NCBI RefSeq assembly: GCF_046119375.1
Contig: NW_027362769.1
Location: 369,148,001 to 369,212,000, forward strand
Direction of reading: 5' to 3'
Source: Phyllobates terribilis
Lineage: Eukaryota
Length of the DNA: 64,000 bases
Shown piece after piece: positions 14,208 to 23,300 of the stretch (position 1 is its first letter; every line of letters begins with the position of its first letter). The notes under the pieces were generated by a model that was not told the DNA's origin, did not search any database, and saw only the letters and a program-made list of their open reading frames with translations. The position numbers and the translations under genes were made by a program.

Positions 14208-14855
14208 AATTCCATCCGGCACAACCTCTCTTTGAATAAATGCTTCATGAAAGTCGCCAGAGGAAAGGATGAACCTGGGAAAGGAGGATTTTGGCAGATG
14301 GATCCTCGTTACGCTGATATGTTCGTGAATGGAGTATTACGAAGGAGAAGGATGCCAGCTTCTCATCTTGACCCTCCAAGGTGCAGCAACGTACCGATCC
14401 ACCATCCCTACCAGTCATCACCAAATAACCGCCAAAACCCACGTTCTTCTTGCAGTTACAAGCAGCTAAGAAGACAAGAGAAGCCCAGTCCTGTTTTGCC
14501 AGCCCTGAGGTCACAGGAACGACATGGGGACAACTTCTTTTCTTCTGAAAGTGATCATCTGCATGGAAGCAACTTTGATGACCTTGATCTGCAGACAGCC
14601 TTAATATCAATGTGGTGGGAAGGAGACATAGGACCTTCTGGGGTCAATGCCTCAGTTGTGAACGCTTCCAATTTGGAAGTAGCCCATCAGGAACCTGCCA
14701 TAATGGATAGCCAATGGTTCCTGCCTACTGACCAACATCCAACTTGGCAAGAGTTGAAAGAGGAACCTGTGGCGAATCAGTGGTTCATAGACAATGGTTA
14801 TGTCGAAGATGTTTTGTATGAGTGCCCACCATGGGAACGGGCTGAGACATTATGA
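14208..14855 (+). CDS. foxj1.2: FOXJ1-family forkhead transcription factor, coding exon 2
   Basis: Acceptor tttcag|AATTCC; [13 protein letters not shown]...PGKGGFW completes the forkhead domain in frame; TGA at 14853-14855; 368 aa in total. Confidence 0.93.
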
Positions 14856-17796: not shown

Positions 17797-19344
17797 ACGT
17801 ATGAAAAAAAAAATCTTAGCTTTTACTACCCCTTAAACAGCTGCGTGCTATCGTTTTTTTTTTTTGTTTTCTGTGGGGTTATTGACTTGCATTGACGAGT
17901 TAAATAAACCAGACAAAAAAAAAAAAAAAAAAAATCAACTAATGTGTCAAACCGGCCTAATGCTGCAGTCTTGGGCTATGGCTATGTCTTACTTTCTTAA
18001 TTGCTATTTCTTAAAATGTTTCCTGATGTGGTTTTCAATAATTTTTGAAAAGTTTTTTTTTTCCTGAAGCATTTTTTATTTCTGCAGTGTTTTGATTGAA
18101 GAGTGCCTATATTGGAGTCGATTCCATTAGCGCCCGCACTTGCACTTTTTTTTCCACCAGACGTTTTTCAAAACTTTGTCAGGAAAAAAAATTGCCAATA
18201 AAACCCTCCTTATAAGAACAGAAAAATGGATTTCCCAAATGATTAGGAAAAATTATCCAATTTTTTTAAGCGGTTTCTAAGGGGGATTTTGGAAAGGATC
18301 TGCTCTAAAACTCTTAAAAGAATGGATCAGCCCCAAAACACTTTAAAAACTGTTCCTATTCATTTATGCAGGAAATCCAATTTTTTTTTGCTTATTGCAT
18401 TTTTTTTGTGATTTTTTTACATGAATTTTTATTGCATACTTTTCAGATGCGGTTTTTGCCTCTTTTTAGTATGTCTTGTTTAAAATAAAACTACTTTGTT
18501 TTGGAAACTTCCTGTTTGCTGAGTTATTAAGCTTTTTGGTAAAGTCATGTATGTATTACATGAGATTTTACTACGTTTCGGCTGCTGAAACGCACTAAAA
18601 ACACATTTGCAGCTTTAATCTGCATGTTATTTAAGTCTATGGGGAAAATCCGCGAATAAAGTGCGGATTTTAAAAAAATGCACCACAGGTTAATTTCTGC
18701 AGCGTAAAAAAAGCACAGTAAAATGTATACAAATCTGGAATGGTAATACGCTCTGTTTTTGTTTTGTTTTTTTTTCATGGAAGAAAGGCACCAAATACTC
18801 ATTGTGGGAACTTAGCCTTAAAAATGTTTCAGGAATTGAAACCTTCTTCAAAAATTCTTAAAAAAGTAGCATTTCGAGAAGTGGTTCCCACTTGACTGCT
18901 GAGCACTTTTGATCGGATTCCAGTGTCGTGGCCCTACCCTTACCAGTTCTTCCATACTTCCGAACTGGTCTATAACTGGTCTACCGGATACCATCTAATT
19001 TGAGACTAAGTTAACTCATTCTGATGTAAGCAGGAACGTCTCCCCTCGTGAAATGGATCTCACGGGCATGTGTGGCACCACTCCCTCACTAACACACAAG
19101 CTGTGAGCAAACACGAGCTCGATAAATATTCCAAGACTGAGTGAATTATTAATGGGATCCCGTCACCTGTCAAGGACCTGTCACGCACCTGTCGCCCCAC
19201 ACTCATCCCTCCACTCTGTAATGTGCTTTCATCTCAACTTACCCCATGATATGGTGGCTGACATATCAGACCCTTCACTGTGGGTAAATTATTATAGCAT
19301 AGTATTAGGCAATTTATTAAATTCTATTAACAGTGAGGAATTAA

Positions 19345-19617
19345 AGTACAGTGAGGCATAAAAGAGTACCAATATTAACATATTATATAATAACACCATT
19401 ATAGACCCTTGCCCCTGAGGACACCAGTCAGGCGAAACATGCCAGAGAGGTTATGAGAGATTCTTTAACAGCATATGCGACTGTATCAAGCATTACTAAC
19501 ACAATCTAAATGTGATACTGTTATGGGCTGCAGTCATCACAGTTATTAATATAGTATTACCTCCTACCTTAATGTTTCGCCTGACCAGTGTCCTCAGGGA
19601 GATGGGTCTATAATGGA
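19345..19617. mobile_element. Small inverted-arm element, copy 1 (truncated), carrying two hammerhead-like motifs
   Basis: Colinear with 19997-20510; the internal arms are inverted. Confidence 0.7.
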
Positions 19618-19787
19618 CATAGTATTTAGCCAGTTTCATAATGGTAGGTGTGATTATTCAATATAAGCCCGGGGCCAATACCTGAGGCCTATATATAGTA
19701 TTTACTATGTACAGATTGTCAAACTCAAAAAAAATCGCTAAACTCTAAACTGCAAAATAAAACATAATTTTTATAGTATCCTATTAA

Positions 19788-19979
19788 GGCCATGACACCA
19801 CCATCAGCATTTGGACAGTATTTTTTCTCAGGAGTGGGAAGCAAAACCAGGAGTGGGTGATAAATGCAGAATTGGTGACTTGTTTCTATTATACATTTTC
19901 TCTGATTGTTCCTCACCTGGTTTTGGCTCCCACTCCTGAAAAAATATACTGACCAAATACTGATAGTGGGGCCGAGGCC
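19788..19979. mobile_element. PIF/Harbinger-type MITE
   Basis: Inverted ends, TAA/TTA flanks; reverse complement of 20165-20357. Confidence 0.8.
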
Positions 19980-20068
19980 TTACAGTGTGGAACTAGAGTA
20001 CAGTGAGGCATAAAAGAGTACCAATATTAACTTATTATACTATAACACCATTATAGACCCATACCCCC

Positions 20069-20097
20069 CTGAGGACGCCGGACAGGTGAAACATGTC
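20069..20097 (+). ncRNA. Minimal type I hammerhead ribozyme-like motif (best preserved of four)
   Basis: CTGAGGA-C-GCC GGACA GGT-GAAAC-ATGTC: conserved core, 3-bp stem II, palindromic ACATGT stem III, GUC triplet. Stem I pairing is poor. Confidence 0.5.
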
Positions 20098-20164
20098 AGA
20101 TAGGTTATGAGCTATTCTTTTAACAGCATATGCGACTGTATCAAGCATGACTAACACAATCTAA

Positions 20165-20357
20165 GGCCTCGGCCCCCACTGTCAGTATTCGGTCAGTATT
20201 TTTTCTCAGGAGTGGGAGCCAAAACCAGGTGAGGAACAATCAGAGAAAAGGCATAATAGAAACAAGTCACCAATTCTGCTTTTATCACCCACTCTTGGTT
20301 TTGGCTCCCACTCCTGAGAAAAAATACTGACCAAATACTGATAGTGGGGCCGTGGTC
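20165..20357. mobile_element. PIF/Harbinger-type MITE nested in the inverted-arm element
   Basis: TAA TSD at 20162-20164 and 20358-20360; the empty site is seen at 19507-19509. Confidence 0.85.
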
Positions 20358-23300
20358 TAAATATGATACTGTTATGGGCTGCAGTCATCAGTTATTTATA
20401 TAGTATTACCTTCTATCTTAATGTTTCGCCTGACCGGTGTCCTCAGGGGGATGAGTTTACAACGAATCTATAACATGAAATCTTAATATTGCTACTCTTT
20501 TATGCCTTCTGGTTAACATAGTACTTATAATATTTGCAGTCTAGACTTTAGGGTCTTTTTGCCTGTTTATTACAAATGTATTATCTCATGCCCACCTAAA
20601 CTTGCTGGATGTTGATATTTTTGCTTACATATGGTAGACAGCCTCTGGCATATTACAGGTGGAGCAGAATGTATTGATACTGGCAGCAGGCACCGTGTCC
20701 ATCCCTTTAGGTCAGTCAGACAATAACGTGTGACGTGACCACGCGACAGTAATTTCCCGTTCTCTTCCTTGTGTTACATGTAAAGAATAAAGCCACGTAA
20801 CCTCATCTTTTAGTCGCGCGCAGATCGGGTGTCGGGAGGGTTAACCCTTTTACAGCTGAGCTGGGTGTAAGGAAATATCACTTGTGTAATTGGAATGACT
20901 TCTTTTTTGTTAACTGGTAGAAGCTGCTGGGAGTTGTAGTCCCACTTGTGTTGAAGATATATTGACAACCCCTATGGTCGCTTTAATGGTTGCTAGTGGT
21001 GGGTGTCAGCTTTGGGAAAGCAAATTTTATGGTGCTAGGTATAGAAAGCAACAAGGGGCACCCACAGAAAGGAGCACCCGCAAAAAGGGGCACCCGCAAA
21101 ACAAGAGAGCACCTGCAAAAAGGGGCACGATGTGATCCCATTAACCAGCTCCTTCCTGGCCGCCAACATTCCAACACACTGGTAATCCACCGGCTGCAAA
21201 GGGCTCGGCCATTCTGAACAGGTCCATCAACTTTTTAACCCTTCATACTATCACCTAGGAATGTTCAGCATGAACGGACCTGCCCGGGTGGTTGACAGCC
21301 CCCCTCCGATTCTTTCTTTTATACCTCCCAGGGCATTGTGACTGGCAGGGACACAAAGTGCACTATCACCCAGGCCTGCCGAAACATGTCCCCTTGTGTC
21401 ACAGCATGCATTCCTCCAACCGTAGACTTAACTGTTTGATGGCCAAAGAGGTCCAGGGTAATTGTTGCCACATTGCAGCGACATTAACCCACGATGATAT
21501 AACAGACTGTCCAATCTTACAGAATGCAGAGCGGTGACGTTCACACGTTTGATTTTCCACATACGATAAAGATAGACCAATTATTCTGATCAGAGTTTGG
21601 TCCTAGTGTCATCCGTTTTTATTGTACGAGATATAAAAAAAAAGTTTTTCCATCTTCTCCTTTCTGACAGTCCATCAAAATCAGACCGCACTCGGATGTC
21701 ACCCGAGTGCAGTCCAATTTTTTCACGGACCCATTTAACTTGCATGGCCAATTTTGATCCGACCCTCAAAGCAAAATTGGACACGTCTCCGTGATTTTTC
21801 ACTGACGTCTCCATCCGCAAAAAAAGATCACAGACATGTGAATGGCCCCATACACTATCACAGGTACGAGTGCTCTCTGTGAAAACCACGGGCGGCGTTC
21901 GTACGTGAAAATGAGACGTCTGAATGAGGCCTAAACCAAAGAGTCTTTATGGCATACAGTGAATTGGCACTGATCAGAGATTCTCCACGGGTATAAAGCG
22001 TGTAAAGCAGCAGGCACCTAAAGCCAGGTTCAGATTAGCGCGTTTCGGGCAGAGTGCAAAACGGGAGAGACCACGGACCGCCATAAAATGTCTGAAATCG
22101 GTCTATGGTAGCACCGCATTCTTCATTGGGCGCAATTAGAGGTAAGCAAAAATATTCAGAGTGCGGTTTGCTTTTCGCAGAGTGTCAGTCTGGAGAAACT
22201 CATTTTTTTTCTTTCCGTGTACAAGAAAAACTGATGACACTCGGACCTCACACTGATGGACGTCAGATCGGAATAATCGTATCCGTTTTTCTCCTACGTG
22301 GAAAATACTGGCATGTGGATTTCTGAAATCTCATGGATGTTGCTTATTTTTTTTCCTTCCTAATTTGAAACAATTTCAACGTCAGTTTTTCAGCCTTTCT
22401 TCGCTTATTTTAATTAAAAAACACAAAAAAAAAGTCAAAAATGTGCGTATTTTTTGTGTTTTTGCTGCCAACACGTAAGTATAGGCAGCAGAAAAAATCT
22501 GAACGTGTACACATACCCTTACATAGGTTTTTCATCTGGCTGCTTTATCCCCAAAACAGCGCCACTTCTGTTCACAGGTTGTGTCTGGTATTGCAGATGA
22601 GTTGTAGTGCTATAAGATTTCTCCAAATCTTCTCCTAAGCTGTGTGCTCCCCTCGTCTACAAAGGAGTTGGTATAGCAGATACTCTGTGATGGAGGGGGG
22701 GTTTGTGGCCTGGCTCTATGACAGTATAGGAAAATTGCACAACTAAAAACTCCTTAATGGCGCAGTCAGATGGCCGTAAAAAAAAACGGACAGAGATCGG
22801 AATGCAGTGCACGGACTGACCAGCGGCTCTATCGACCAGGGCGTGACAGCTGCATAGAAATACATGAAGATGTCACGCTCGGGTGAGGAGAGCTGCCGGC
22901 CAGTCCGTGCCCTGCATCCGATTTATACGGCCGTCTGACTGCGTCCTAACATTAAGTCATTGGTCTGCAATGGCTCCATCTATTGTCTTCTCTCTATGCA
23001 AACCTCATAGCAGTTATTATGATGCTGCCAGTAGGACTTTTTATATCGGACCCCATCGATACACAGGAAATAGGCCAAGAAACAATGGTTCTAATATACT
23101 TTATTATTTGACAACACTTTTGTCATAAATAGAAAACATCCAAAGGGTTTCACAATGACTGGTGCAGCGATGGAGCAAAAAGCAACCCATGAGGAACCAA
23201 AATGTTGTGTAAGCACACTCGATCACTCACACACACGGTATAACCTAACATACAAGACACGTATTCATGTACAGCTAGGTGGGGGCATATATACTGTATA

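What the first reader, a model, noticed from the sequence alone, without database searches (positions are those of the whole stretch)
19345..20510. Four minimal hammerhead-ribozyme-like motifs in inverted pairs inside a small repeated element
Seen: CTGAGGA-C-(G/A)CC/ACT-5-nt loop-GG(C/T)-GAAAC-AT occurs on + at 19415-19443 and 20069-20097, and on - at ~19569-19597 and ~20418-20446. Each element copy carries one sense and one antisense motif in its inverted arms. The 20069 copy has a palindromic ACATGT stem III and a GUC triplet. The stem II differences are mostly CpG transitions from an ancestral GCC/GGC stem. Known: minimal type I hammerheads with palindromic stem III work as dimers and mark Penelope-like elements and retrozymes. 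Inference: a non-autonomous family whose transcripts from either strand would carry a ribozyme. Stem I pairs poorly here, so these copies may be dead.
Basis: partly seen in the sequence, partly recalled or inferred. Interest (0 to 1): 0.72.

Follow-up and report, generated by a model that had tools for sequence, protein, structure and literature searches.

The report
Hammerhead look-alikes in a dead palindromic repeat
The four hammerhead-ribozyme-like motifs are four copies of one 30-base block sitting in the inverted arms of an old, decayed, palindromic transposon-like element in a frog genome, and nothing tested here shows that they are or were working ribozymes.

Summary
The sequence observation is correct. 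CTGAGGA..GAAAC occurs four times, at the stated places and on the stated strands, against 0.37 expected by chance in the window.

The four motifs are not independent. They are the two arms of one palindrome, times one local duplication.
- The full element runs 19712-20578 and is flanked by TA on both sides. It is about 476 bp, with arms of about 160-190 nt, and is split twice by a very abundant 192-bp MITE.
- A 304-bp internal fragment of it lies at 19313-19616.

At 80% likeness or more, two genome read sets show no other copy. A related species has the locus as single copy. So there is no detectable family.

No Rfam hammerhead model matches, even at E up to 10 on 86-base slices. The block is no better conserved than the rest of the arm (p 0.08). 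All stem II changes are neutral-looking CpG transitions. The isolated motifs fold no better than shuffles, and the whole transcript folds as a long hairpin.

Two of its pairs rest on changes private to that copy.

My odds are about 6:3 for a chance look-alike in a MITE-like relic over a dead relic of a real Penelope-type minimal hammerhead. Earlier notes of this scan describe Penelope-type inverted hammerheads elsewhere in this genome, but not this sequence.

The parts
19712..20578 (.). Full palindromic element (E2). It is about 476 bp once the two nested MITEs are removed. It is flanked by TA at 19710-19711 and 20579-20580, and its ends read TA|CAGATTGT.. and ..ACAAATG|TA.
   Evidence: Arm-to-arm alignments give 79% identity over ungapped columns. 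The palindrome stops at the TA dinucleotides.
19712..20094 (+). Left arm of E2, 188 nt without the nested MITE. The hammerhead-like block sits at its inner end.
20421..20578 (-). Right arm of E2. The hammerhead-like block sits at its inner end.
   Evidence: (I2, I6, I7)
19313..19616 (.). E1, a 304-bp partial duplicate of the inner part of E2. It carries the inner arms and the centre, and lacks the outer arms and termini.
   Evidence: BLAST gives 88.5% identity over 304 columns. The flanks outside show no homology above shuffles.
19415..19443 (+). Hammerhead-like block, E1 left arm. The core is intact, position 10.1-11.1 is A.C, the site reads GCC instead of GUC, and there is no stem I.
19559..19603 (-). 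The only topologically complete hammerhead-like motif.
- Stem I is 19603-19598 paired with 19564-19559, 6 bp including one G.U.
- The core starts with C3 at 19597, followed by an extra C.
- Stem II is 2 bp plus an A.C mismatch.
- Stem III is 2 bp with a 6-nt loop.
- The predicted cut is after A17 at 19565.
   Evidence: Descriptor scan, chance estimate, energies.
20069..20097 (+). Hammerhead-like block, E2 left arm. Position 10.1-11.1 is G.U, with the ACAUGU palindrome and a GUC site. Only one of the first five stem I positions can pair.
20408..20452 (-). Hammerhead-like block, E2 right arm, the duplicate of 19559-19603. Position 15.2-16.2 is mismatched (AUA) and two stem I positions are mismatched.
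19788..19979 (.). Nested abundant palindromic MITE, copy 1, inserted in the outer left arm of E2 (flanked by TAA / TTA).
   Evidence: (I3)
20165..20357 (.). Nested abundant palindromic MITE, copy 2, inserted in the centre of E2. The TAA target duplication is at 20162-20164 and 20358-20360, and E1 shows the empty site.
   Evidence: (I4)

Best explanation
The region holds the decayed remains of one palindromic, TA-flanked mobile element of the MITE or foldback kind.
- The element runs 19712-20578, with arms of about 160-190 nt and a centre of about 130 nt.
- A very abundant 192-bp MITE later inserted into it twice.
- A 304-bp internal fragment of the same element was duplicated about 100 bp upstream (19313-19616).

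The four hammerhead-like motifs are copies of a single block of about 30 nt at the inner end of the arms. Palindromy puts the block on both strands and the duplication doubles it.

The block matches the low-information hammerhead core by chance. It is not a working ribozyme now and probably never was. Any transcript of the element folds into a long hairpin in which the block is fully paired with its mirror copy.

Shown here: the anatomy, the low copy number, the missing hammerhead model match, the missing extra conservation, and the fold.
Inferred: DNA-transposon origin (from the TA flanks and symmetric arms) and the chance origin of the motif.
For: - Anatomy: symmetric arms end on TA|CA.. at both sides. 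E1 is a fragment, 88.5% identical to E2.
- Copy number: contig depth on the element is 1-2 times the single-copy level (13.7 to 28 in X1, 10.4 to 19 in X3). It reaches 1e5-1e6 on the nested MITE.
- No other copy lies in the window. None turned up in the viral or metagenome collections.
- No hammerhead family appears at Rfam gathering score, at E<=10 on 1.35 kb, or on 86-nt slices around the two best copies.
- The block is 27/30 identical between arms against 79% overall. The permutation p is 0.08 for that window and 0.41 for any window.
- Between E1 and E2 the left block differs at 4 of 27 positions, which is worse than the 88% average.
- Stem II changes are G-to-A (breaking the pair) and C-to-U (giving G.U) at CpG sites. 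None is compensatory.
- Three of the four copies fail even a relaxed descriptor.
- In the best copy the hammerhead fold is -2.5 kcal/mol. The minimum-energy fold is -7.4 kcal/mol and pairs CCUGA with UCAGG, which buries the core.
- The isolated motifs fold no better than shuffles, with z of +1.55, +1.26, -0.84 and -0.66.
- The E1 transcript forms a hairpin of -113.9 kcal/mol, z -9.
- Two pairs of the best copy rest on states private to E1. At 19567 both E2 and the related species read T. At 19600, E2 and both left arms read the other base.
- The motifs converge at the inner arm ends, unlike head-to-head Penelope repeats (PMC8557442, PMC3846280).
Against: - The minus-strand copy at 19603-19559 is a complete type I hammerhead in topology. 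A hit that good is expected only about 0.003 times per window from the composition of 1274 core candidates in 30 Mb of simulated sequence. That simulation gave 2 hits with stem I of 4 bp or more and none with 5 bp or more.
- The extra nucleotide after A9, the likely ancestral G10.1-C11.1 pair and the palindromic loop 3 are published hallmarks of Penelope-type minimal hammerheads. Frog genomes hold thousands of those, about 9,000 in Xenopus tropicalis (PMC4209133).
- The TA duplication and termini rest on a single full copy. No transposase partner or other family member was seen, so the DNA-transposon assignment is an inference.
- Rfam models may be insensitive to minimal hammerheads that lack stem III.
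Confidence: 0.6

Rival explanations
1. The block is a dead relic of a genuine minimal type I hammerhead of the Penelope or retrozyme kind. Its sense strand is the minus strand. The unit was turned into a palindrome by snap-back (self-primed) synthesis or by inverted duplication. That copied only the 5' half of the ribozyme, up to GAAACAU, into the other arm. This would explain why the minus-strand motif has a stem I and a cleavage site while the plus-strand motifs do not. Decay, mostly at CpG sites, has since killed all copies.
For: - The minus-strand E1 copy passes a relaxed hammerhead descriptor with a 6-bp stem I. The chance expectation is about 0.003 per window.
- The extra nucleotide between A9 and 10.1, G at 10.1 in one copy, and the palindromic ACAUGU match the features listed in PMC4209133. 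That paper also reports pairs of minimal hammerheads 100-700 bp apart on opposite strands.
- Tail-to-tail Penelope palindromes through self-priming are discussed in PMC3846280.
- Four of the five block differences are CpG transitions, which is compatible with a GCC/GGC stem II in the ancestor.
- First readers of this scan noted Penelope-type inverted hammerheads elsewhere in this genome. These notes are unverified.
Against: - Stem II is 3 bp at most, against the 6-8 bp reported for Penelope minimal hammerheads (PMC4209133).
- Loop 3 of the complete copy is 6 nt and only partly palindromic.
- Two of its pairs are private to E1 and absent from E2, and one of them is also absent from the related species.
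- No hammerhead model matches.
- No related copies exist at 80% likeness or more.
- No Penelope ORF was found in ORFs within about 5 kb.
- The orientation is opposite to the common head-to-head form.
- A 5-bp alternative hairpin buries CUGA in all four copies.
Confidence: 0.28
2. The element belongs to a live or recently live non-autonomous family whose transcripts from either strand carry a working (dimeric) hammerhead.
For: The core is intact in all four copies. In a transcript of either strand the sense motif lies in the 5' arm, so it would be made before its complement (seen directly in the sequence).
Against: - There is no family at 80% likeness or more, and no contigs on the element in the run guessed to be RNA.
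- The plus-strand motifs have no stem I.
- The two copies differ by 12% with uncompensated changes.
- The folds do not favour the hammerhead.
Confidence: 0.04
3. The palindrome matters as a hairpin RNA rather than through any ribozyme. Transcripts fold into a long double-stranded stem that feeds small-RNA pathways, and the hammerhead resemblance is irrelevant.
For: The E1 transcript folds into a hairpin of -113.9 kcal/mol, z -9.
Against: No expression was seen on the element itself in the one run guessed to be RNA. The arms are decaying at a neutral-looking rate, 79% identity between arms. Such hairpins are a by-product of any palindromic repeat.
Confidence: 0.05

Closest known systems
Minimal type I hammerheads of Penelope-like elements (Cervera and de la Pena 2014, PMC4209133)
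   Same: The CUGANGA and GAAA core, an unpaired nucleotide between A9 and 10.1, a short palindromic stem III/loop 3 (ACAUGU in one copy), and motif pairs on opposite strands 100-700 bp apart. The host is a frog, and frog genomes are rich in such motifs.
   Different: - Stem II is 3 bp at best, against 6-8 bp.
- Position 10.1-11.1 is A.C in three copies.
- Stem I is present in one copy only.
- There is no pLTR or ORF context and no family.
- The motifs converge at the inner ends of the arms instead of diverging as in head-to-head pLTRs.
MITEs and foldback-type DNA transposon relics with long terminal inverted repeats (Tc1/mariner-like by TA flanks)
   Same: Symmetric arms of about 160-190 nt around a unique centre, ends reading TA|CA.., TA on both flanks, a non-coding element of about 476 bp, and nesting with other MITEs.
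   Different: Only one full copy and one fragment are detectable at 80% likeness or more. No transposase partner or other family members were seen, so the superfamily is unassigned.
Amphibian retrozymes / satellite 2
   Same: Non-coding repeat units of a few hundred bases with hammerhead-type motifs in a frog or newt genome.
   Different: Retrozymes are direct tandem units, each with a canonical hammerhead that Rfam models recognise. Here the units are palindromic, low-copy and not recognised by any hammerhead model.

Membership tests
Hammerhead ribozyme (type I, incl. minimal Penelope type) | Catalytic core C3-U4-G5-A6-N7-G8-A9 and G12-A13-A14 | tested here: met
   All four copies have it.
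Hammerhead ribozyme (type I, incl. minimal Penelope type) | A15.1-U16.1 pair followed by H17 at the cleavage site | tested here: inconclusive
   Present at 20095-20097 (GUC), 19567-19565 minus strand (GUA) and 20416-20414 minus strand (AUA, with 15.2-16.2 mismatched). Absent at 19441-19443 (GCC)..
Hammerhead ribozyme (type I, incl. minimal Penelope type) | Stem II of 4 bp or more closed by G10.1-C11.1 | tested here: not met
   At most 3 bp after a bulged C. Position 10.1-11.1 is A.C in three copies and G.U in one.
Hammerhead ribozyme (type I, incl. minimal Penelope type) | Stem I of 4 bp or more flanking the core and the cleavage site | tested here: inconclusive
   6 bp in the minus-strand E1 copy only. 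The other three copies fail.
Hammerhead ribozyme (type I, incl. minimal Penelope type) | Match to a curated hammerhead covariance model | tested here: not met
   No hammerhead family at gathering score or at E<=10, even on 86-nt slices.
Hammerhead ribozyme (type I, incl. minimal Penelope type) | Covariation in the stems, and a core more conserved than the flanks | tested here: not met
   There are no two-sided changes among the four copies. The block is 27/30 identical against 79% for the arm, p 0.08. The sample is only four related copies.
Hammerhead ribozyme (type I, incl. minimal Penelope type) | Self-cleavage | not testable with these tools
   Needs in vitro transcription of natural copies.
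Penelope-like element (pLTR remnant) | Reverse transcriptase / GIY-YIG ORF or a recognisable pLTR family nearby | tested here: not met
   Ten ORFs between 14.2 and 24.9 kb gave no RT or GIY-YIG hit. Decayed ORFs would be missed.
Penelope-like element (pLTR remnant) | Head-to-head inverted copies, with hammerheads pointing outward towards the 3' ends | tested here: not met
   The motifs point inward from the inner ends of the arms. The usual arrangement is described in PMC8557442 and PMC3846280. Tail-to-tail forms are mentioned there as less frequent.
Penelope-like element (pLTR remnant) | Multi-copy family in the genome | tested here: not met
   Depth is 1-2 times single copy at 80% likeness or more. 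Older, more diverged copies would not be seen.
Retrozyme | Direct tandem units, each with a hammerhead, giving circular RNA | tested here: not met
   There is one full palindrome and one partial copy in direct order, not unit-length tandems. No RNA contigs lie on it.
MITE / long-TIR DNA transposon relic | Terminal inverted repeats | tested here: met
   The arms align at 79% identity out to both ends.
MITE / long-TIR DNA transposon relic | Target-site duplication | tested here: inconclusive
   TA sits on both flanks of the one full copy. A 2-bp match in AT-rich DNA is weak evidence.
MITE / long-TIR DNA transposon relic | Many dispersed copies | tested here: not met
   None at 80% likeness or more. 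This is compatible with a very old family but does not show one.

The most novel reading that the evidence does not exclude
A transposon-like palindromic element carries a minimal hammerhead at the inner end of each inverted arm. A transcript from either strand would then make a sense ribozyme in its 5' arm and could cut itself before the complementary 3' arm is transcribed and locks everything into a hairpin. That would be a hammerhead-bearing element outside the Penelope and retrozyme classes.
Probability: 0.05. Interest if true: 0.7.

Novelty: already known. Interest (0 to 1): 0.15.

Why it matters
If the motifs had been real, they would have tied hammerhead ribozymes to a palindromic, DNA-transposon-like element. 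That would be new.

As it stands, the case mainly shows how easily the short hammerhead core turns up inside repeats. Palindromy and local duplication can make one chance or relic motif look like four independent ones. Frog genomes really do hold thousands of Penelope-type minimal hammerheads, so telling relics from look-alikes needs family-level data. A single locus cannot provide that.

Tried and rejected
- Rfam at gathering score on the whole window, at E<=10 on 19250-20600 and on two 86-nt slices. No hammerhead appeared. The only hits were sub-threshold miRNA-type matches on the nested MITE and a 16.8-bit chance match to GP_knot2.
- Exact-pattern scans for the block and for the conserved mid-arm block in viral and metagenome contigs found nothing. 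These collections are not expected to hold frog DNA, so this says little.
- Full-text search for six sequence words of the element found no paper.
- nhmmer and BLAST of the element against the window found no further copy.
- I looked for outer arms around E1 and found none above shuffles. I therefore dropped the idea of two full elements homogenised by gene conversion.
- I rejected a simple tandem duplication of a 457-bp unit, because 19617-19769 has no counterpart after 20462.
- I considered an inner MITE nested in an outer palindrome. I rejected it as less parsimonious than one element with long arms.
- The supplement of PMC4209133 and the paper PMC5785218 are not held. The published Xenopus minimal-hammerhead consensus families could therefore not be compared.
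- The differences of the related species in the left arm were not listed by read laying, so that arm could not be polarised.
Full report
**Observation.** CTGAGGA, 12 bases, then GAAAC occurs at 19415 (+), 20069 (+), 19597 (-) and 20446 (-). Shuffles of the window give 0.37 such matches on average and never four. A 27-nt version of the block matches the same four places with 0-3 mismatches. The copy at 20069 reads ACATGT and then GTC, ending at 20097. Four of the five differences among the blocks lie at CpG sites. The facts as stated are therefore right.

**Anatomy.**
- The second copy is a complete palindrome from 19712 to 20578. Its ends read TA|CAGATTGT.. on the left and ..ACAAATG|TA on the right, and the symmetry stops exactly at the TA dinucleotides.
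- Two insertions of an unrelated 192-bp palindromic MITE lie inside it, at 19788-19979 and 20165-20357. The second has a clean TAA duplication, and E1 shows the empty site.
- Without those insertions the element is about 476 bp. The arms are 188 and 158 nt, 79% identical, around a centre of about 130 nt.
- The hammerhead-like block is the innermost 30 nt of each arm.
- The first copy (19313-19616) is only an internal fragment, 88.5% identical to the second over 304 columns. Homology stops abruptly at both ends, and its flanks match nothing above shuffles.
- The four motifs are therefore one ancestral block, doubled by palindromy and doubled again by one local duplication. The comparison with chance has to be made for a single event.

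**Copy number.**
- I laid the contigs of two genome read sets of this species, one of a related species and one run guessed to be RNA on 19300-20560 at 80% likeness.
- On the element the summed depth is 13.7 to 28 in X1 and 10.4 to 19 in X3. That is one to two times the single-copy contigs that cover it without a difference.
- The doubling is confined to the left arm, where the two local copies cross-match.
- On the nested MITE the same measure reaches 1e5 to 2e6.
- The related species has single-copy contigs on 19324-19456 and 19467-19617 at about 88% identity, continuing into the unique spacer. The locus is therefore orthologous and old.
- The RNA-like run has nothing on the element.
- No other copy lies in the window. 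Pattern scans of the viral and metagenome collections were blank, as expected for frog DNA.
- So there is no detectable family. If one existed, its members now differ by more than 20%.

**Is the block a hammerhead?**
- *Rfam.* No hammerhead family appears at gathering score, at E up to 10 on 1.35 kb, or on 86-nt slices around the two best copies.
- *Literature.* Rfam may be weak on minimal hammerheads, so I read the defining paper (PMC4209133). Penelope-type minimal hammerheads have:
  - an unpaired nucleotide between A9 and 10.1;
  - a conserved G10.1-C11.1 pair;
  - a palindromic 15.2-16.2 or loop 3;
  - a stem II of 6-8 bp and a stem I of 4-5 bp.

  They also occur as pairs on opposite strands 100-700 bp apart, and X. 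tropicalis has about 9,000 of them.
- *What the block shares.* It has the extra nucleotide (C) and the palindromic ACAUGU in one copy. If the CpG argument is accepted, the ancestor had a G10.1-C11.1 pair.
- *What it lacks.* Stem II is 3 bp at most, and position 10.1-11.1 is A.C in three of the four copies.
It lies on the minus strand from 19603 to 19559:
  - stem I AUCUCC/GGAGGU, 6 bp;
  - the core, followed by a bulged C;
  - a weak stem II;
  - stem III of two pairs closed by a 6-nt loop;
  - a GUA site, with the cut after 19565.
- The other three copies fail. The plus-strand copies have no stem I at all.
- *Chance of the complete copy.* In 30 Mb of simulated sequence with the window's dinucleotide make-up there were 1274 core-plus-site candidates. 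Two had a stem I of 4 bp or more with the other conditions met, and none had 5 bp or more. From those counts a hit as good as the complete copy is expected about 0.003 times per window. This is the one result that speaks for a real hammerhead origin.

**Why I still favour chance.**
- Two of the pairs in the complete copy depend on bases private to that copy.
  - At 19567 (position 16.2), both the second copy and the related species read T.
  - At 19600 (position 2.3), the second copy and both left arms read the other base.
- The common ancestor of the two copies therefore had a mismatch in stem III and one in stem I. A motif of that grade is 10-30 times more likely by chance.
- The block is not significantly better conserved than the rest of the arm. 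It is 27/30 identical against 79% overall, with permutation p 0.08 for that window and 0.41 for the best window anywhere.
- Between the two copies the left block has 4 differences in 27 positions, which is worse than the average.
- The stem II changes are what neutral CpG decay gives. G to A breaks the pair, C to U leaves G.U, and none is compensated.
- Energetically, the hammerhead fold of the complete copy is -2.5 kcal/mol. The minimum-energy fold is -7.4 kcal/mol and pairs CCUGA with UCAGG, burying the core. That hairpin is available in all four copies.
- The four isolated motifs fold no better than shuffles.
- A transcript of the first copy folds into a hairpin of -113.9 kcal/mol, z -9, in which the block is paired with its mirror image over 29 consecutive pairs.

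**Penelope context.**
- Penelope insertions often carry an inverted 5'-truncated copy at the 5' end, the head-to-head form. The hammerhead sits near the pLTR-ORF junction, roughly 100 bp from the 3' end of the insertion (PMC8557442, PMC11167929, PMC3846280).
- Hammerheads in such palindromes therefore point outward.
- Here they point inward from the inner ends of the arms.
- A tail-to-tail form by self-priming is discussed in PMC3846280 as less frequent. It would produce symmetric arms and would explain why only one strand has the 3' half of the ribozyme. I keep it as the main rival.
- No reverse transcriptase or GIY-YIG hit was found among ten ORFs within about 5 kb. The only hit is the end of a forkhead domain at 14232-14855.

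**Weighing.** Chance occurrences of core plus GAAAC and real hammerhead-derived motifs should be about equally common in a frog genome, so the prior is roughly even.
- Against a real origin: the short stem II, the missing model match and the missing family.
- For a real origin: the complete minus-strand copy, discounted for its private changes.

My estimates are:
- about 0.6 for a chance look-alike in a MITE-like relic;
- about 0.28 for a dead relic of a real minimal hammerhead;
- about 0.05 for a role as a hairpin RNA, plus a small remainder.

Under every one of these the present copies are very unlikely to cleave.

**Relation to earlier notes.** Word look-ups show that first readers flagged retrozymes and Penelope-type inverted hammerheads elsewhere in this genome. 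One follow-up called a similar case a decayed Penelope remnant. The by-sequence look-up for this element was blank. I used these notes only as leads and did not check them.

**Limits.** The frog genome itself could not be searched, so family-level covariation could not be tested. Read laying listed only part of the related species' differences. The TA target duplication rests on one copy.

Noticed in passing
window 19788-19979 and 20165-20357: A 192-bp palindromic MITE. Its ends read GGCC..CGGCCCC.., with a 3-bp TAA target duplication (PIF/Harbinger-like by inference). Its summed contig depth is 1e5-2e6 against about 14 for single-copy DNA. It is also present in the related species and in the run guessed to be RNA. 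It gives sub-threshold Rfam hits to MITE-derived miRNA families (MIR2619 50.6 bits, MIR8562 36.9 bits).
   Followed up: partly
window 14232-14855 (+): An ORF of 207 aa whose first 31 residues match the end of the Forkhead domain (PF00250, 28.9 bits). It is probably an exon of a FOX gene about 5 kb upstream of the element.
   Followed up: no
window 21589-22257 and 22802-22917: Two more inverted-repeat structures. One has arms of 42-55 nt spanning about 670 bp. The other is a tight hairpin with 54-nt arms and an 8-nt loop.
   Followed up: no
window 20375-20560: The related species has contigs on 19324-19729 at about 88% identity but none on the right half of the full element. It may carry only the fragment-like copy, or the right half may be more diverged. 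A gap in contigs proves nothing.
   Followed up: no
window 19558-19621 (-): A weak Rfam match (16.8 bits, gathering 80) to the gag/pol readthrough pseudoknot GP_knot2, resting on sequence similarity in the unpaired 3' part. I judge it chance.
   Followed up: partly
window 19330-19365 and 19982-20020: The left arm carries an 18-bp tandem duplication of its CAGTGAGG..AAAG stretch that the right arm lacks. A third TGAGG occurs in the hammerhead-like block, so CTGAGGA may be a variant of a repeated subterminal motif.
   Followed up: partly
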